This document shows positions 8,450-15,166 of a DNA stretch of 64,000 nt, piece after piece. The translations under genes were made by a program, and so were the position numbers. Each line of letters begins with the position of its first letter. The first letter of the stretch is position 1. A model generated the notes under the pieces. That model was not told the origin of the DNA. It ran no database searches and worked only from the letters and a program-made list of their open reading frames with translations. The DNA comes from Ylistrum balloti. Lineage: Eukaryota. The stretch lies in contig NW_026782030.1 in NCBI RefSeq assembly GCF_031769215.1, positions 1 through 64,000 of the forward strand, given 5' to 3'.

Positions 8450-8501
8450 TTCCCAAGCGGGGAATCGAACCCCGGCCGCCGCGGTGAGAGCGCGGAATCC
8501 T
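8450..8501 (-). pseudogene. tRNA-Glu 3' part (nt 21-72), interrupted by Tx1 element A
   Basis: ttcccaagcg...gagcgcggaatcc(t) runs directly into a T11 tract (the element's poly(A) on the minus strand) instead of aaccactagacc. Confidence 0.95.
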
Positions 8502-8550
8502 TTTTTTTTTTCTTTAAAAATAAATCTTTTAATGTTCCCAGCGAATTGGA

Positions 8551-8574
8551 CCTTCGGGGTTGGGGCCCCGAAGG
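8551..8574 (-). promoter_or_regulatory. 3'UTR stem-loop of element A (9-bp stem, loop CCCCAA in RNA sense)
   Basis: ccttcgggg ttgggg ccccgaagg is a perfect inverted repeat, conserved by covariation with 14455-14478. Confidence 0.8.
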
Positions 8575-8730
8575 CTCCTCACAGTTCATATAAAATACAA
8601 ATATAAACAATTCATACAATACATAAAATCACAGGTTTGCTAAATAATAAAGAATCACATTTTTTAAAAATTGCGTTGATGCAAACATACAATGTTTACT
8701 AATACTGATGAAACAAATAACTTGACATAG

Positions 8731-11700
8731 TCATATAGATAAGACGTAGGAAGCTAAATTTACATTACTTAGAGAAAAGTCGACTTCCTTTAATAATTTA
8801 TTGTCAGCAACAATATATTTCTTGAACAAACTGCATTGTTTTTTCATCTGGTAGTAATGTTTGATATAATCAAAATACTTTCTGAAAGTATACTTAAAAA
8901 AGCCCTTCAGATTTAATTTAGACATCCCATTAACAACCAGATTACGCCTTCTAAGAATGCTAAAGCGTACTGTACCTAAAAGGAAGTTGATGAAAAAAGG
9001 ATTTGTTTGTTTAACCTTGCTAGTGTAACCCAGAAGTATAAGTTTACCAAGATAAACATCTGAAAGATAGGTCTGATCAGCATCGGAGAAAAGCTTCTTA
9101 CTTAATTTGTCAATGTAGGCCAAAAATTCTGCAAGGTCTGAACACTCAACAAACAGATGCTGTAGGGTTTCCTTCTCGGAATTGCACAATAGACAAGTGT
9201 CACTGTCAACTTTCCCTATTTTCTTTAACTTTTCCATTGTAAAAATAGTATTATGCACAATACGAAAATGAACATCAATGATGTCACAAGGTAGAAATTG
9301 CAAATACATAATGGAAAAGACGCGAGGAAGACAAACATTCTGAAAAATTTCTGACCAGTACCCCGAAGATTTAGGACATTTGAAGCAATAACGGATAAAA
9401 CAAGCATAAATATCACGAGTAGTTTTGGGGCGTAGCTGAATAGTAGTCCCATTTCCATCTTTGTAAGTAACACACAGCCCTGGCTCTGTTCTTCTATTTG
9501 TATGTACATTAGTTAAAATCACATCTTTATAATTGACTGGAATAGATTTCATAATAGTATCATAATGAGATAACAAGATATCATTAGAGATATCGAGGTT
9601 AGCTTCTTTAACTACCTTAGCTACTGTGCTTGAGGAGAGGAACTTTGACACAACTTCAAGCGTTAGATGCTTAACCTTTACAATACCCGCCCTAGCAAAA
9701 CACTCAATAAAAACAGGTTTCTCATTGTCCATAATGTTAGAGTTAAAAAACAAAGGCTGTTCATAAATGAAAAAGGTATCCATATTAAAACAAACCTTAT
9801 TTACTGCCTGAAAGGCATACCATGCTTTCAACATTTCGCGGTAAACAATAGGCACTGTTCTTAAATATTTATCAGGAAATTTACAATAAATTACTTCAGC
9901 ATCAAGATTTAAACCAAGTATTTTGTTGAAAAAATAGCTGCACATATTCTTCCAGACAGCAGTACAAGACGTGTCCAACCATCTAAATAAAAATTTTAAT
10001 CTGAAAGATCTCAATTTTAATTCAATGTCAGGTACATTTAAACCACCTTCCTTTCTTTTACCAATAATAGTGTCATAGGCTACTAAATGTGATCTACCAT
10101 GCCATAAAAAATCAATAGATAGTTTCTTGATATTACTAATAACTGACAGAGGAATAGTCTGTGAAGTTAGACAATACCAACACCTGGACATCAATAAGGA
10201 ACTGATTACAGTAGCTCTTCCTTGTATAGTCAATTGCCTCTGCGACCACATTCTAAGAATATTTTTAATAGACACAACTTTACTATCCCAGTTCTTTTCG
10301 TTACACATGTGTATATCTATACCGACAAATACACCCAACACACATATAACCTTATCACATAATTTGATACGTAGTTTTTCAAGTTCATCCATTGTGATAT
10401 TACCTTTACCAATACATAACATTTCGGACTTATCTTTATTTATCTTGGCACCAGAGCCCTTACTGTAGACTTCTAACAGGTTAAAAACATGTTTAAAAGT
10501 TTCCTTATTTCCAAGTGTCAACGTCGTGTCGTCTGCGTGTTGATACACCTTAGACTCAAATTCATTATGAGGAACTTTGATACCAGAAATATCTGGAGAC
10601 TTTAAAAACATATTCCCCAGAGGTTCCGCGGCCAAAACGTAAAGCATCGCCGAAATAGGACACCCTTGTCTCACTGAATTTCCAATAGAGATAAAATTTG
10701 TCAAATTACCATTATATTTGACAGAACTGGAGATTTTAGTGTAAAAAATCTTGATCCAATCAACGAAATTCTCACCAAAACCAAATTTTTTCAAAAGTTT
10801 AAATAAATACGGATGACTAACACGATCAAAAGCCTTTTCTTGATCAATTTTGAGGATGTACCCTTCAAGTTCCTCTTGATTTGTTAAATCAATGATATCA
10901 CGAACGCTAAAAATGGTGTCCGAAATATCCCGCCCTATAACACAGCACGACTGAAATTCTGAAATGATTGAGGGTAAAACAGACTTAAGGCGATCTGACA
11001 TTACCCGAGCAAGGATCTTGTAGTCTACATTAAGGAGACTAATTGGTCTCCAATTTTTCAGAAGAGACTTATCCCCCCTTTTCTTGTATACAAGGTTAAT
11101 AACACATCGTCTCATAGTTCTTGTCAATTCTTTTTCAGCCCAGATACTTTCTACTACCCGAGGAAAAACATATTTTAATTCATCAAAAAAGTTACAATAA
11201 AACTCAACAGTCAGGCCGTCCAAGCCGGGACTCTTACATTTGGACATAGTAGACAAAGCTTTTTGTATCTCATCAACAGTAATAGCAGAGTCACACTTAT
11301 CTCTATCCTCCACAGAGATAGTTTTGTCAATAAAAGATAAAAGATTATCAATATCATCATCATTTGTCTCAATACAATTATATAAATCATTATAAAAATT
11401 GAATATTTCATTAGACATTTCATCACCAGTTGTCAATATTTTCCCATCAACATCACGTAAACATTTTATAGAATTGCAGTTCTGTCTATATTTCTCCAGC
11501 TTTAAAAAATAACTGGTATTTTTATCACCATCAACGGCCCATTTACACTTAGACCTTAACACAGCACCATTACATCTCTCTTTTTCAAACTTTTCCAAAC
11601 TTTGTCGGAGCTCTTCATATTTAGTACAATCAAAAGGTTTACCATTGGCTATATCACAGGAAAATTCCTGTAGCTTATTTTGAATTTTATAATGTTCAGA

Positions 11701-12639
11701 CATCCGTTTTTTACTTCGATCCTTTCCATATATCTGAGAAAATCTCTTTATTTTAAATTTCAGATTATCCCACCACACTGAAGGTTCATCGATAAACAAT
11801 GAACATTTCCGTTCCTCAGAAATTAAATTTCTTATTTTAACATTATAATCTTCTTCAAGTAAAAACCAATTGTTCAAAATCCATATACCAGGGCCTCTTT
11901 CCTCAATACAAGTATCCAATTTCATTGTAACTAAAGAATGATCACTAAACGTTGTATCATTATAATAGATATTCTGCACATAGGTACTTAAATGTCTGGA
12001 AACCAAGAAGTAGTCGATTCTACTCTGTGACAAATTTCCATTACGTACCTGTTTACGGGAAAAAGCCGAACAATTTCTATTTCTACTGCGCCACAAATCA
12101 GAAACATTGCAAGTAAACATAAGGCTTTTTAATGAAGCCAGACTTGGGGTTGTATGATGTGCAGTAAATCCAGTCCTATCAAAACTGGAGAATGTGGAGT
12201 TAAAATCCCCACCAAAAATAATTTTATCTGCATCATCCGACAACCACTTTTTCAAATTATCAAAAAATATTTTTCTCTCACCATCAACATTTGGTGCATA
12301 AACATTAACTAAATCCCACTCTAAATTCTCAATGGATATTTTCAAACGTAAAACTCTCCCGTCATAACCCTCATACTGGATAACATTATTTTTCCATTTA
12401 TTAGAAATAAGGAACGCAACTCCCTTTCTGTGGTTAGTACTGTTATCATAAATAATTTTACCATTCCATAAATGTTTTATTTGATTTACAAAATCATCAT
12501 CCCAAAAGGTCTCTTGCAGGAAAGCAATATCACAAAAATTACTATTTACCAGTGCAAAAACACTTTTAACTTTATCCACATCTCTGAGGCCATTCACATT
12601 AAATGATACAAAACTAAGCATAATAATAGCAAAAAACAT
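8731..12639 (-). CDS. Tx1 ORF2, 1302 aa: APE endonuclease + reverse transcriptase + C-terminal CCHC motif
   Basis: APE motifs SFNVNG, LQET, NVYAPN, GGDFN, SRIDYFLVS, SDH. RT motifs KSPGLDGLTVEFY, WRPISLLNVDYKILA, DQEKAFDRV, VRQGCPIS, QHADD. C-terminal CLLC-x7-HLFVEC. No stops or frameshifts. Confidence 0.97.
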   Translation of the reverse strand: MFFAIIMLSFVSFNVNGLRDVDKVKSVFALVNSNFCDIAFLQETFWDDDFVNQIKHLWNGKIIYDNSTNHRKGVAFLISNKWKNNVIQYEGYDGRVLRLKISIENLEWDLVNVYAPNVDGERKIFFDNLKKWLSDDADKIIFGGDFNSTFSSFDRTGFTAHHTTPSLASLKSLMFTCNVSDLWRSRNRNCSAFSRKQVRNGNLSQSRIDYFLVSRHLSTYVQNIYYNDTTFSDHSLVTMKLDTCIEERGPGIWILNNWFLLEEDYNVKIRNLISEERKCSLFIDEPSVWWDNLKFKIKRFSQIYGKDRSKKRMSEHYKIQNKLQEFSCDIANGKPFDCTKYEELRQSLEKFEKERCNGAVLRSKCKWAVDGDKNTSYFLKLEKYRQNCNSIKCLRDVDGKILTTGDEMSNEIFNFYNDLYNCIETNDDDIDNLLSFIDKTISVEDRDKCDSAITVDEIQKALSTMSKCKSPGLDGLTVEFYCNFFDELKYVFPRVVESIWAEKELTRTMRRCVINLVYKKRGDKSLLKNWRPISLLNVDYKILARVMSDRLKSVLPSIISEFQSCCVIGRDISDTIFSVRDIIDLTNQEELEGYILKIDQEKAFDRVSHPYLFKLLKKFGFGENFVDWIKIFYTKISSSVKYNGNLTNFISIGNSVRQGCPISAMLYVLAAEPLGNMFLKSPDISGIKVPHNEFESKVYQHADDTTLTLGNKETFKHVFNLLEVYSKGSGAKINKDKSEMLCIGKGNITMDELEKLRIKLCDKVICVLGVFVGIDIHMCNEKNWDSKVVSIKNILRMWSQRQLTIQGRATVISSLLMSRCWYCLTSQTIPLSVISNIKKLSIDFLWHGRSHLVAYDTIIGKRKEGGLNVPDIELKLRSFRLKFLFRWLDTSCTAVWKNMCSYFFNKILGLNLDAEVIYCKFPDKYLRTVPIVYREMLKAWYAFQAVNKVCFNMDTFFIYEQPLFFNSNIMDNEKPVFIECFARAGIVKVKHLTLEVVSKFLSSSTVAKVVKEANLDISNDILLSHYDTIMKSIPVNYKDVILTNVHTNRRTEPGLCVTYKDGNGTTIQLRPKTTRDIYACFIRYCFKCPKSSGYWSEIFQNVCLPRVFSIMYLQFLPCDIIDVHFRIVHNTIFTMEKLKKIGKVDSDTCLLCNSEKETLQHLFVECSDLAEFLAYIDKLSKKLFSDADQTYLSDVYLGKLILLGYTSKVKQTNPFFINFLLGTVRFSILRRRNLVVNGMSKLNLKGFFKYTFRKYFDYIKHYYQMKKQCSLFKKYIVADNKLLKEVDFSLSNVNLASYVLSI

Positions 12640-13935
12640 TCAAGTGCTTTTAAGTTTTTTAGTTTTCTTTTTCCTTTGAGGTTTGTGGACCTTTCCAGAA
12701 TCAACACGTGACTTTAAAAATTCCCGCGAACGCAAAATGGAATCAGTCACTAGAGCACCCTCTACCTCGTCCTCCTCACTTACATCAGAACCCTTGCTAT
12801 CTGGCCACATCGACCCAGAAATAGGTACAGGAGTACATGAGCCATCAAAATCTATGATGTCACCAAAGCAAACATCCCCATTAGGGGCGAGATTACCATC
12901 TGCCATATCTGTGTCCTTCTCTAACTTTTCAGGTACAGTAATGTTGGGATTAACCTGCGAGACCGTGACAACCTCTGAAACCGTGTTATTACTTTCAATA
13001 TGCTCAACCGGAACATTCACCTGTATACACTCTGCATTAACTTCCTCATCTCCATCCAAATCCTGTAATTTCTCACTGACGACATTTATCTGTGTGTTAT
13101 CGCTACCTGTGTAATCACCGCAGTCAAACATGTCACACTTGCACGAATCCAACGTTTCCTTGCATTTGTTACATTGTTCACGGCTACCAAAACAAATACA
13201 GTCATACCGATTACACCCCGTGCACAATCGTATGGCATTGTCCCGCCTCGGCGCGCGCGAACAATCACACTCAAACCTCACCTCACCACATCGGGTACAC
13301 GGCTCAGTCGTACATGCACGTTTGAAATGCCCCTGGGCATTGCATCGGAAGCACTTAAACTGTGGACACTGACGAAACAGGTGTTGGTCACTATAACACA
13401 GAGTGCAAACTTTCACCTGGTTGTCGTGTATAACACGAAAGTAATCATTCCCGAATTTGATACTGTAGGGTAACGATTTCAGAGATGGTGGAAACTTTAC
13501 CCTAACATATCTTGTACCATCCGCTATCTGAGTTCCTTTGTAAAATCGTCGCTTAATAGGCGAAACAATTTCAATGTCCAGACTTTCAAGCTTTTCAAGG
13601 ATATCGTCATCAGATATATATGCTGGTAGATATAAAAAGCTCACCATCAGAAACTTCTGTGTTAAATCATAACACTCGTATGTCCTACCTTCAATATCAA
13701 TTCCCTGCAATAACATGTTCGTCATTGCACGGCAATCGAGAGTGACCTCGTATAGGTTCCCAGATTTAGGGACACACGCCAAAACGGTTCCATCCCCACA
13801 CAACTGAGTAATGGTATCAATAACCTTGCCAGCCTTCACAACTTTATTATCCAAAATGTCAACACAAACAGTATTTTCTTTTAAATAGTGTCTTTTTTCA
13901 CTTTGTTTATTACGAGAGGCGTCCTGAGACGCCAT
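12640..13935 (-). CDS. Tx1 ORF1, ~431 aa gag-like nucleic-acid-binding protein
   Basis: The track start at 13989 is TTG; the first ATG is at 13935 (gagATGG, MASQD). Tx1-type VSFLYLPAYISD...GTRYV region, CCHC knuckles CTLCYSDQHLFRQC and CFRCNAQGHFKRAC, acidic linker, basic C-terminus. Confidence 0.92.
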   Translation of the reverse strand: MASQDASRNKQSEKRHYLKENTVCVDILDNKVVKAGKVIDTITQLCGDGTVLACVPKSGNLYEVTLDCRAMTNMLLQGIDIEGRTYECYDLTQKFLMVSFLYLPAYISDDDILEKLESLDIEIVSPIKRRFYKGTQIADGTRYVRVKFPPSLKSLPYSIKFGNDYFRVIHDNQVKVCTLCYSDQHLFRQCPQFKCFRCNAQGHFKRACTTEPCTRCGEVRFECDCSRAPRRDNAIRLCTGCNRYDCICFGSREQCNKCKETLDSCKCDMFDCGDYTGSDNTQINVVSEKLQDLDGDEEVNAECIQVNVPVEHIESNNTVSEVVTVSQVNPNITVPEKLEKDTDMADGNLAPNGDVCFGDIIDFDGSCTPVPISGSMWPDSKGSDVSEEDEVEGALVTDSILRSREFLKSRVDSGKVHKPQRKKKTKKLKST

Positions 13936-14355
13936 CTCGCCCCGGTAAACACCGGTAACAAAAATGTCAACAAAACTGACGAAATACAATCAATTGTCAC
14001 ATCATCAATATTTTGTTGTAAACACGAATATCCAATGATTATATAAGTCAGAAAAGTAGGGTTAAAAACCCCGTCTTACCACCGATGTTTGACGATTATA
14101 CAACAGGTAAACAAACGACGTCCATTGACCTTGAAATCATCACCGGAACCCAAAACATACCAAGTTCAATGACCATTACTTTGCATACAAGCTTTTGACT
14201 GTAAGGAATAATATGATGAGCTCATTGTTTCTTTTTTTTCGCTTGATGACAACTGACATTTCAATATCTGTCTTCACTACAAGTACACAGGAAAAAGCAA
14301 ACGATGACGGGCAATGCCAGTTTTTAGGCCATTTCAATGCGGGAAGAAAAATGTA

Positions 14356-14407
14356 TTCCCAAGCGGGGAATCGAACCCCGGCCGCCGCGGTGAGAGCGCG
14401 GAATCCT
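14356..14407 (-). pseudogene. tRNA-Glu 3' part (nt 21-72), interrupted by Tx1 element B
   Basis: Same junction as at 8501: gagcgcggaatcc followed by T10. Confidence 0.95.
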
Positions 14408-15166
14408 TTTTTTTTTCTTGTAAAAATAAAAATTTTATTATCCCAGCAATAGGGTCTCAAGGGTTGGGGCCCTTGAGATTCCTCACAGTGTAATCATTTC
14501 ATAATCATGTATTAAAAATAGATAAAAGGTAAAAAGAAAAATCACATGTTTCATAACAAAGTAACCATAACTATCACAGACGAAAGTTTTACAAATTAAC
14601 TGAGACACGATCGTCAATCACAGATACAATATTGTTATCACAAATAAAGTATTTTCGGAAAAGTGAAACATTGTTTTTCTTTCGATAGTGATTAAAAGCA
14701 TAGTTGATAAATTTTTTGACTGTAAACTTAAAGAATCGCAATATTGGAACACTACCTTCATTTAACATGACCATATTTCTTCTTTTGTAAATACAAAATC
14801 GTGCCACACTCAAAACAAAGTTTATGAAGTACGAGTTAACATTTTTTGAATTTCTGCCACAGCCTAAAAGAACTAGCCAATCATAATTGAGTACATTCAC
14901 AATTTCCGAAGGCACTCTAATAAACAAACTATCCAACATATCGGTTAAAAAGACGTTAAGGGTAGATAACTCTGGACATCCAATAAATAAATGAAAAAGA
15001 TTACCTGGTGGCTACTGGCATACCGGACATGTATTGAATCTGACATACCACACTTCATCAATTTCTTTTTCGTAAAAATAGCGTTATGTGCAACTTTAAA
15101 ATGGAGCTCGACACACTCAGCCGGATAATAAGGCACGTGTACCATTCTATAAATACTGTCGACCTC
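14408..15166 (-). mobile_element. 5'-truncated Tx1 element B (different family), decayed, 13-14 bp TSD
   Basis: Encodes only the ORF2 C-terminus (VHVPYYPAECVELHFKVAHNAIFT...CPVCQ*PPGNLFHLFIGC...FINFVLSVARFCIYKRRN) with one frameshift and one in-frame TAG. AATAAA plus poly(A). TSD gagcgcggaatcc(t) at 14394-14407 and 15167-15180. Confidence 0.93.
14455..14478 (-). promoter_or_regulatory. 3'UTR stem-loop of element B (9-bp stem, loop CCCCAA in RNA sense)
   Basis: tctcaaggg ttgggg cccttgaga is a perfect inverted repeat. Confidence 0.8.

What the first reader, a model, noticed from the sequence alone, without database searches (positions are those of the whole stretch)
8512..8586. 3'-terminal RNA hairpin conserved by covariation between the two families, with a possible pseudoknot
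Seen (RNA sense): A has CCUUCGGGG-CCCCAA-CCCCGAAGG and B (14455-14478) has UCUCAAGGG-CCCCAA-CCCUUGAGA. Both have a 9-bp stem and an identical loop; four of nine pairs differ and all four are compensated. Both are preceded by ACUGUGAGGA and followed by GCUGGGA, a poly(A) signal (AUUAAA / AAUAAA), a U-rich stretch and poly(A), while the rest of the UTRs do not align. Loop CCCA could pair with the conserved UGGG to form a 4-bp pseudoknot. Established: stringent-type LINEs such as eel UnaL2 recognise a 3' stem-loop. Inference: this is the cis element recognised by ORF2 for target-primed reverse transcription, notable in an L1-group element.
Basis: partly seen in the sequence, partly recalled or inferred. 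Interest (0 to 1): 0.8.

Follow-up and report, generated by a model that had tools for sequence, protein, structure and literature searches.

The report
Conserved RNA hairpin in LINE tails
Two very different jumping genes (LINEs) that both land in scallop tRNA-Glu genes end in the same small RNA hairpin, kept by matched base changes; it is most likely the tag their copying enzyme recognises, a kind of signal already known from other LINEs.

Summary
On the minus strand, element A (intact) and element B (5'-truncated, decayed) each carry a perfect 9-bp hairpin with the identical loop CCCCAA. The hairpins lie at 8551-8574 and 14455-14478. Four of the nine pairs differ on both sides and none is broken. 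Both hairpins are flanked by identical ACUGUGAGGA and GCUGGGA, then A(A/U)UAAA, a U-rich tract and 10-11 A.

The ORF2 C-termini are only 33% identical, so the block is under selection. Substitutions are concentrated in the stem (8/18 against 4/32 outside it, p=0.017). Random stem changes keep all nine pairs in only 5 of 10,000 trials.

New context:
- Two bivalve relatives, inserted in tRNA-Lys and tRNA-Leu genes, have unrelated hairpins at the same distance from the A-run.
- Six other relatives have no such hairpin.
- ACUGUGAGGA is the last copy of a UGUGA motif enriched across this group of relatives (26 found, 4.7 expected).

The pseudoknot has no support, because all four of its pairs are invariant. 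Recognition by the reverse transcriptase is the best reading but is untested. A comparable stem-loop is already published for L1-clade LINEs in plants. Verdict: a new member of a known kind.

The parts
8551..8574 (-). Element A hairpin: 5' arm 8574-8566 (CCUUCGGGG), loop 8565-8560 (CCCCAA), 3' arm 8559-8551 (CCCCGAAGG). A possible extra G8575-U8550 wobble pair closes it.
14455..14478 (-). Element B hairpin: 5' arm 14478-14470 (UCUCAAGGG), loop 14469-14464 (CCCCAA), 3' arm 14463-14455 (CCCUUGAGA).
8576..8585 (-). A: invariant 5' flank ACUGUGAGGA. It holds the last of three UGUGA motifs in the 3'UTR; the others are at 8629-8633 and 8655-8659.
14480..14489 (-). B: invariant 5' flank ACUGUGAGGA. 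It holds the last of three UGUGA motifs; the others are at 14542-14546 and 14574-14578.
8536..8542 (-). A: invariant 3' flank GCUGGGA, the proposed pseudoknot partner of loop CCCA.
14441..14447 (-). B: invariant 3' flank GCUGGGA.
8501..8533 (-). A: AUUAAA hexamer (8533-8528), U-rich AGAUUUAUUUUUAAAG (8527-8512) and a run of 11 A (8511-8501) that abuts tRNA-Glu position 22 (GGAUUCC, 8500 downward).
14407..14439 (-). B: AAUAAA hexamer (14439-14434), U-rich AUUUUUAUUUUUACAAG (14433-14417) and a run of 10 A (14416-14407) that abuts the same tRNA-Glu position.
8512..8730 (-). A: whole 3'UTR (219 nt), downstream of the ORF2 stop.
14417..14588 (-). B: whole 3'UTR (172 nt), downstream of the decayed ORF2 C-terminus.
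8734..12639 (-). A ORF2, 1302 aa: AP-endonuclease, reverse transcriptase and a C-terminal zinc motif. It is the presumed reader of the tail.
12643..13989 (-). A ORF1, 449 aa, with a weak CCHC zinc-knuckle match. It is an alternative RNA-binding partner.
14592..15166 (-). B: remnant of the ORF2 C-terminus, with one frameshift and one in-frame stop. B is 5'-truncated inside tRNA-Glu and has a 13-bp target duplication, GGATTCCGCGCTC.

Best explanation
The hairpin is a structured element of the LINE's 3' tail RNA. It most likely marks the transcript as the template for the element's own reverse-transcription machinery ('stringent' template recognition). The protein would read the invariant loop CCCCAA and the invariant flanks ACUGUGAGGA and GCUGGGA by sequence, and the 9-bp stem only by shape. 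The hairpin sits at a fixed distance from the poly(A) signal and the A-run where target-primed reverse transcription starts inside the tRNA-Glu gene.

Shown: the hairpin exists in both elements, it is kept by compensatory change, its loop and flanks are invariant, and two other tRNA-targeting relatives have a hairpin at the same place.

For: - Structure: 9/9 pairs in both copies, 4 double changes, 0 broken. The hairpins are far more stable than shuffles.
- Selection: ORF2 C-termini are 33% identical and coding DNA about 50% identical. Yet 38 of the 50 tail columns are identical, and substitutions concentrate in the stem (8/18 vs 4/32, Fisher p=0.017). Random stem changes keep pairing in 4.6e-4 of trials.
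- The asymmetric, non-palindromic loop is conserved while the arms change. This fits a single-stranded hairpin, not a DNA half-site palindrome.
- Position: the best local hairpin starts at -67, -67, -70 and -70 from the A-run in A, B, L093 (tRNA-Leu) and L090 (tRNA-Lys). Each beats 98-100% of shuffles. The layout is hairpin, 15-18 nt, A(A/U)UAAA, 13-17 nt, A8-11.
- Precedent: L1-clade plant LINEs have a conserved loop and flank with covarying stems (PMC3472496). ZfL2 ORF2 binds its tail stem-loop, reading the loop specifically and the stem generically (PMC4176376).
- In the same species, Logan contigs in three of four runs match the tail up to 8599 and then diverge. Summed contig depth over the tail bin is about twice that of the next bins in three of four runs. 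This hints at further elements sharing the tail.
Against: - Only two sequences carry this particular hairpin, so formal covariation power is minimal (31/500 shuffles).
- Six of ten related families (L002, L083, L084, L087, L088, L092) have no significant hairpin, so relatives manage without one.
- An identical loop and flanks on ORF2s this diverged would suit a host factor at least as well as a co-evolving element protein.
- The fixed spacing to the poly(A) hexamer also fits a role in 3'-end formation.
- There are no RNA data: no RNA run holds the element.
- No SINE partner was demonstrated.
- B lacks the ORF2 region that would be compared.
Confidence: 0.5

Rival explanations
1. The hairpin is read by a host factor, or acts in RNA 3'-end formation, export or stability. 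For example, it could be an upstream auxiliary element of the poly(A) site, and not the reverse transcriptase's recognition tag.
For: - Spacing to the A(A/U)UAAA hexamer is constant at 15-18 nt in four families.
- Loop and flanks are identical on two ORF2 lineages only 33% identical.
- The UGUGA repeats upstream look like binding sites for an RNA-binding protein.
Against: - Related families with the same kind of poly(A) signal have no hairpin.
- Loops differ completely between A/B, L090 and L093, which is unexpected for one host factor.
- No known polyadenylation element has this form.
- No RNA data are available.
Confidence: 0.25
2. The tail is an exchangeable module. One family acquired it from the other by recombination or template switching inside the shared tRNA-Glu arrays. 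Part of the identity would then reflect shared history of the tail and not constraint on every conserved base.
For: - In a tree of the last ~215 residues, B falls in a supported clade (96) with P0005, P0023 and P0029. A falls in another clade (93) with P0024, P0002 and P0006, whose other members have different tails and targets.
- A and B lie next to each other in one array.
Against: - The AU test does not reject A and B being sisters (p=0.37).
- The spacer and post-hexamer parts of the tail have diverged (about 12/17 identical each), so the tail is not recent.
- Exchange would not explain four compensated pairs. It is compatible with the main explanation and is not an alternative function.
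Confidence: 0.12
3. The tail forms an H-type pseudoknot (loop CCCA with UGGG). Alternatively it mimics or derives from tRNA-Glu, with loop CCCAA resembling the acceptor 5' strand and GCUGGGAA the acceptor 3' strand, coupling the RNA to its tRNA-Glu target.
For: - The pairing can be drawn, and the connecting loops of 1, 1 and 9-10 nt are sterically possible.
- A and B share a target and a tail but not their closest ORF2 relatives.
- The inner five pairs of A's stem equal the tRNA-Glu T-stem.
Against: - All four pseudoknot pairs are invariant, so there is no covariation.
- An alternative extension of the hairpin that uses the same bases is the predicted minimum-energy fold in A.
- Tail-to-target similarity is no better than shuffles for A, B, L090, L093, L002 and L088 (P 0.33-0.99).
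- B's stem does not match the T-stem.
- The loops of L090 and L093 have no downstream complement.
Confidence: 0.06
4. The hairpin has no function: a GC-rich palindrome carried along by both families.
For: Only two copies were seen, and B is a dead copy.
Against: - Selection signatures.
- It is a GC-rich island (64% and 55% GC) in roughly 31% GC UTRs.
- Two further families have a hairpin at the same position.
Confidence: 0.05

Closest known systems
3' stem-loop of stringent L1-clade plant LINEs (maize LINE1-1_ZM lineage; Ohshima 2012, PMC3472496)
   Same: It is an L1-group element ending in poly(A). It has a stem-loop near the 3' end with compensatory changes in the stem and conserved bases in the loop and the flank.
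   Different: The sequences differ (loop UCU and flank CGAG there; loop CCCCAA and flanks ACUGUGAGGA/GCUGGGA here). The plant case is backed by a SINE partner sharing the tail; none is shown here. The host is an animal, and this element is site-specific for a tRNA gene.
UnaL2 / ZfL2 (L2 clade) 3'-tail stem-loop bound by ORF2p (Hayashi 2014, PMC4176376)
   Same: A hairpin in the last ~100 nt; loop identity is critical while the stem sequence is replaceable as long as it pairs. This matches the A/B pattern of an invariant loop and a covarying stem.
   Different: A different LINE clade. Those tails end in short tandem repeats, not poly(A). There are no binding or retrotransposition data here. No match to any Rfam family was found in the tails apart from the tRNA remnant.
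Target-specific Tx1-group LINEs (Tx1L, Keno, Kibi, Koshi, Mutsu, Dewa; Kojima and Fujiwara 2004, as cited in PMC4494074 and PMC3706591)
   Same: ORF2 with AP-endonuclease, reverse transcriptase and a C-terminal zinc motif; insertion at one fixed site of a multicopy small-RNA gene.
   Different: The listed targets are U2, 5S, microsatellites, transposons and the spacer of tRNA-Leu (Dewa). Here the insertion is inside the tRNA, at position 21/22. I found no paper in the held library describing a 3' hairpin in this group. Clade membership was not formally tested here.
SART1 (R1 clade), stringent and ending in poly(A) (cited in PMC3472496)
   Same: A site-specific LINE whose 3'UTR is needed for retrotransposition and which still ends in poly(A). 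This shows that poly(A) and a specific 3'UTR signal can coexist.
   Different: A different clade and target (telomeric repeats). The detail of the structure comes from my own knowledge and was not checked here.

Membership tests
Stringent-type LINE 3'-tail recognition stem-loop | A stable stem-loop within about 100 nt of the 3' end of the LINE RNA | tested here: met
   The hairpins lie 40-63 nt upstream of the A-run. They fold at -22.5 and -14.4 kcal/mol, with 0/200 shuffles as stable.
Stringent-type LINE 3'-tail recognition stem-loop | The stem is maintained by compensatory substitutions between related families, with loop or flank bases conserved | tested here: met
   4 of 9 pairs changed on both sides and 0 are broken. 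The loop (6/6) and flanks (10/10, 7/7) are identical. Only two sequences were available.
Stringent-type LINE 3'-tail recognition stem-loop | The tail is shared with non-autonomous partners (SINEs) or other elements mobilised in trans | tested here: inconclusive
   Contigs from three runs match only the tail up to 8599 and then diverge. Summed depth over the tail bin is about double that of the next bins in three of four runs. Their sequences could not be read. No further copy occurs in the window.
Stringent-type LINE 3'-tail recognition stem-loop | Bound by the element's ORF2 protein and required for retrotransposition | not testable with these tools
   This needs binding, TPRT or retrotransposition assays.
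Curated Rfam RNA families (any LINE 3' element or other cis-element) | A match to a curated covariance model | tested here: not met
   At the gathering threshold the window gives only tRNAs. Permissive scans of both tails give only the tRNA-Glu remnant (24.7 and 28.8 bits) plus chance-level hits.
H-type pseudoknot | The second helix (loop CCCA with downstream UGGG) is supported by covariation or is favoured energetically | tested here: inconclusive
   The four pairs are invariant. A competing nested extension is the predicted minimum-energy fold in A but not in B. No pseudoknot-capable folding was run.
tRNA-like or target-derived 3' end | Tail similarity to the target tRNA above chance | tested here: not met
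   Local alignment of tail against target tRNA gives P = 0.79 (A), 0.73 (B), 0.50 (L090) and 0.33 (L093) against 500 dinucleotide shuffles.
Tx1 / L1-group target-specific LINE | ORF2 with AP-endonuclease, RT and a C-terminal zinc motif, plus insertion at one fixed target site | tested here: met
   Pfam matches Exo_endo_phos, RVT_1 and zf-RVT. A and B both join tRNA-Glu at GGTTA|GGATTCC. Relatives join other tRNAs at the equivalent place.
Tx1 / L1-group target-specific LINE | Phylogenetic placement of the RT domain within the Tx1 clade, next to reference Tx1 elements | not tested
   No reference Tx1 sequences were on hand. The label rests on domain architecture and on earlier unchecked notes of this scan.

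The most novel reading that the evidence does not exclude
The tail is a target-coupled or exchangeable module, not a lineage-bound RT tag. Two ORF2 lineages whose nearest relatives hit other tRNAs share both the tRNA-Glu site and this exact loop-and-flank signature. The hairpin, perhaps as a CCCA/UGGG pseudoknot or by pairing with the tRNA-Glu acceptor strand, would then help dock the RNP at tRNA-Glu genes, or would let different families mobilise each other's RNA.
Probability: 0.08. Interest if true: 0.8.

Novelty: new member of a known kind. Interest (0 to 1): 0.4.

Why it matters
If the hairpin is the template tag, this intact scallop element offers a compact package: an endonuclease/RT protein, a roughly 50-nt tail signal and a defined tRNA-gene target. 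That would make 'stringent' template recognition in the L1/Tx1 group directly testable, where the mammalian paradigm is relaxed poly(A) recognition.

The comparison with hairpin-less relatives gives a natural experiment on how tail recognition is gained, lost or replaced. The hairpin-less relatives carry UGUGAUAU repeats plus UUUUAAUAAAGAU-An tails.

It remains an incremental addition to a known class of LINE signals.

Tried and rejected
- A covariance model built from A+B was searched over 83 sources (the window, two close relatives and 80 distant Tx1-like metagenome loci). It also ran on the window with filters off. Only A and B matched.
- The metagenome protein scan returned only relatives at 27-33% identity, none with the motif.
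- Pattern scans of the viral and prokaryotic genome collections gave nothing, or two chance bacterial hits without a stem.
- A protein-word search with the C-terminus found one B-like fragment (P0121), but its contig ends before the tail.
- A trick search used the peptide read across the tRNA-Glu/tail junction. It found only intact tRNA-Glu genes.
- The sequencing-run search found DNA runs only, so no expression or 3'-end data. The variant table was truncated before the hairpin positions.
- The idea that the tail derives from, or mimics, tRNA-Glu was rejected: similarity is no better than shuffles.
- The idea that A and B cannot be sisters was not upheld (AU p=0.37).
- I considered a U-rich/A-rich triple-helix (ENE) reading from memory. 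The hairpin has no U-rich internal loops, so I did not pursue it.
- UGUGA enrichment does not extend to distant Tx1-like elements (3 found against 4.8 expected).

Full report
**Setting.** The first 19 kb of the window are a tandem array of tRNA-Glu(CUC) genes (minus strand) and tRNA-Leu(CAG) genes (plus strand), with a period of 2.3-2.5 kb. Two LINE copies lie on the minus strand inside tRNA-Glu genes.
- Element A is intact. ORF1 is at 12643-13989. ORF2 is at 8734-12639 and has AP-endonuclease, reverse transcriptase and a C-terminal zinc motif.
- Element B runs from 15166 to 14407 and is 5'-truncated. Its ORF2 remnant carries a frameshift and an in-frame stop.
- Both join the tRNA at the same nucleotide (GGTTA|GGATTCC). 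B has a 13-bp target duplication.
- Earlier notes of this scan say the genome is a scallop.

**The observation.**
- Each 3'UTR ends with ACUGUGAGGA, one base, a perfect 9-bp hairpin with loop CCCCAA, a 9-10-nt spacer, GCUGGGA, A(A/U)UAAA, a 16-17-nt U-rich stretch and 10-11 A.
- All nine pairs form in both copies. Four differ on both sides and none is broken.
- The hairpins alone fold at -22.5 and -14.4 kcal/mol, with z -4.4 and -5.2. They are the best local hairpins of the last 110 nt, unmatched by 100 dinucleotide shuffles.

**Is it more than chance?**
- A and B are far apart. The last 150 residues of ORF2 are 33% identical, and the coding DNA is near 50% identical.
- Against that background, 38 of the 50 columns from ACUGUGAGGA to GCUGGGA are identical.
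- The differences are not spread evenly: 8 of 18 stem positions differ, against 4 of 32 elsewhere (Fisher p=0.017).
- Eight random substitutions in the stem leave all nine pairs canonical in only 4.6e-4 of a million trials.
- The arms change while an asymmetric loop stays fixed. This argues for a folded single strand, not a double-stranded palindromic binding site.
- The caveat is sample size. With two sequences, the column-shuffle control cannot fall below about 0.06 (31/500).

**Relatives.**
- ORF2 has many homologues at 41-46% identity, several annotated from Mytilus, plus metagenome and Logan contigs.
- I fetched twelve. Where the 3' junction is present, the element sits inside a tRNA gene at the equivalent place, between the D-loop and the 3' strand of the D-stem. 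The targets are Phe-GAA (L002), Met-CAU (L083), Asn-GUU (L088), Lys-UUU (L090) and Leu-CAG (L093).
- None carries the A/B motif. The covariance model built from A and B found nothing in the sources it searched (the window, L001, L002 and 80 distant loci). I read the 3' ends of the close relatives fetched later by eye and saw no CCCCAA hairpin.
- L090 and L093 have their own, unrelated hairpins at the same place. The best 34-nt hairpin window starts at -70 in both, compared with -67 in A and B. Their energies are -10.5 and -11.6 kcal/mol, reached by 2/100 and 0/100 shuffles.
- All four share the layout: hairpin, 15-18 nt, A(A/U)UAAA, 13-17 nt, A8-11.
- The other six families (L002, L083, L084, L087, L088, L092) have no hairpin better than shuffles. 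Four of them (L002, L083, L087, L088) end in UUUUAAUAAAGAU-A9-10 or a near variant.
- So a hairpin at this position recurs in the group but is not universal.

**The flanks.** ACUGUGAGGA is not special to the hairpin.
- UGUGA, usually as UGUGAU(AU), occurs 26 times in nine 3'UTRs of this group, against 4.7 expected.
- A and B each have three copies at similar distances from the A-run, and the last one is the 'flank'.
- The enrichment is absent from 25 more distant Tx1-like elements (3 found, 4.8 expected).
- The repeated motif is therefore a second candidate cis-signal, more widely shared among these relatives than the hairpin.

**Pseudoknot and tRNA mimicry.**
- The CCCA/UGGG helix can be drawn and is sterically possible. 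Its four pairs never vary.
- A nested extension using the same bases is the predicted minimum-energy fold in A but not in B.
- I also noticed that the inner five pairs of A's stem equal the tRNA-Glu T-stem. Loop CCCAA and GCUGGGAA resemble the two acceptor strands.
- Local alignment of each tail against its own target tRNA is no better than shuffles for any of six elements (P 0.33-0.99). B's stem also does not match the T-stem. I reject that reading as unsupported.

**Are A and B sisters?**
- In a tree of the last ~215 residues, B groups (support 96) with P0005, P0023 and P0029, which target Lys, Asn and Leu. A groups (support 93) with P0024, P0002 and P0006; the latter two target Met and Phe.
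- That would make the shared target and tail either convergent or exchanged.
- However, the AU test does not reject a tree with A and B together (p=0.37).
- Common descent from a tRNA-Glu-specific ancestor that already had this tail remains the simplest account.

**Other data from the species.**
- Four DNA runs hold the element; no RNA run does.
- Laid on 8500-14495, contigs of three runs match the tail up to 8599 and then diverge.
- A deeper contig in three of the runs shows small indels at 8517 and 8525.
- The tail bin has about twice the summed contig depth of the next bins in three of four runs.
- This hints at further elements sharing the tail, but their sequences were not shown.

**Mechanism.** The best reading (about 0.5) is a stringent-type template tag.
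- The element's protein would read the loop and flanks by sequence and the stem by shape, positioned upstream of the A-run where reverse transcription begins.
- This mirrors ZfL2, where ORF2 binds the tail stem-loop, loop swaps abolish mobility and stem swaps are tolerated (PMC4176376).
- It also mirrors an L1-clade plant lineage with a covarying stem and conserved loop and flank (PMC3472496).
- The main rival (about 0.25) is a host-factor or 3'-end-formation element. It is suggested by the fixed spacing to the hexamer and by identical loops on very different ORF2s.
- None of the functional steps has been tested.

**Novelty.**
- Hairpin tags in LINE tails are well known, including in the L1 group, so this is a new member of a known kind.
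- I found no paper in the held library on a 3' hairpin in Tx1-type elements, or on Tx1-type insertion inside bivalve tRNA genes. That is absence from that library only.
- An earlier first-reader note (s1-234451) reports a covarying 3'UTR stem-loop in two other Tx1 elements of this genome. I could not see or test it.

Noticed in passing
L002:6986-7050, L083:5990-6070, L088:7023-7087, L090:4425-4490, L093:6086-6150; window 8500 and 14406: Relatives at 41-46% ORF2 identity sit inside different tRNA genes: Phe-GAA, Met-CAU, Asn-GUU, Lys-UUU and Leu-CAG, with Glu-CUC here. All are at the equivalent position, between the D-loop and the 3' D-stem strand, in the same orientation as the tRNA, with A-runs of only 8-11. 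This is a radiation of LINEs targeting the inside of tRNA genes.
   Followed up: partly
window 8629-8633, 8655-8659, 8579-8583; 14483-14487, 14542-14546, 14574-14578; 3'UTRs of L001, L002, L083, L087, L088: UGUGA (mostly UGUGAUAU) is repeated 2-4 times per 3'UTR in this group: 26 found against 4.7 expected. It is not enriched in distant Tx1-like elements. From memory, some copies (UGUGAUAUA) fit a PUF-protein type consensus; I did not test this.
   Followed up: partly
window 13990-14250: Element A has no tRNA-Glu 5' half at its 5' end. Upstream of ORF1, the sequence runs into the downstream flank of the tRNA-Glu that B interrupts, so a spacer and a tRNA-Leu unit are missing. This looks like an array deletion or recombination at A's 5' junction.
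   Followed up: no
window 12637-12642 (minus strand): The ORF1 stop UGA is followed directly by the ORF2 AUG in the same frame (UGAAUG). In relatives the two ORFs are 2 nt apart or overlap by 1 nt. This suggests termination-reinitiation or readthrough.
   Followed up: no
window 8512-8527 with 8501-8511; 14417-14433 with 14407-14416: The U-rich tract just before the A-run (UUUAUUUUU in A, UUUUUAUUUUU in B) is about as long as the A-run and separated from it by 4-5 nt, so the A-tail could fold back on it. This is AU-rich sequence, so it may mean nothing.
   Followed up: no
window 14356-14423 and 8450-8518 (minus strand): The Rfam tRNA model still scores the tRNA-Glu remnant plus the end of the LINE tail at 28.8 and 24.7 bits (threshold 29), as a full-length match. 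Most of the score comes from the intact 3' two-thirds of the tRNA.
   Followed up: no
window 8500-8599 (runs X1, X2, X3, X5): Contigs of the same species match only the last ~100 nt of element A. They then diverge (loose end at 8599 in three of the four runs) or differ before 8528 (one run). The tail bin has about twice the summed contig depth of the next bins in three of four runs. Possibly other families or non-autonomous elements carry the same tail.
   Followed up: partly
L088:5506-7022: The tRNA-Asn-targeting relative has a 1.5-kb 3'UTR, while its relatives have 85-490 nt. A GAGAGGCGCTYGCCACC motif near its start is shared with L089.
   Followed up: no
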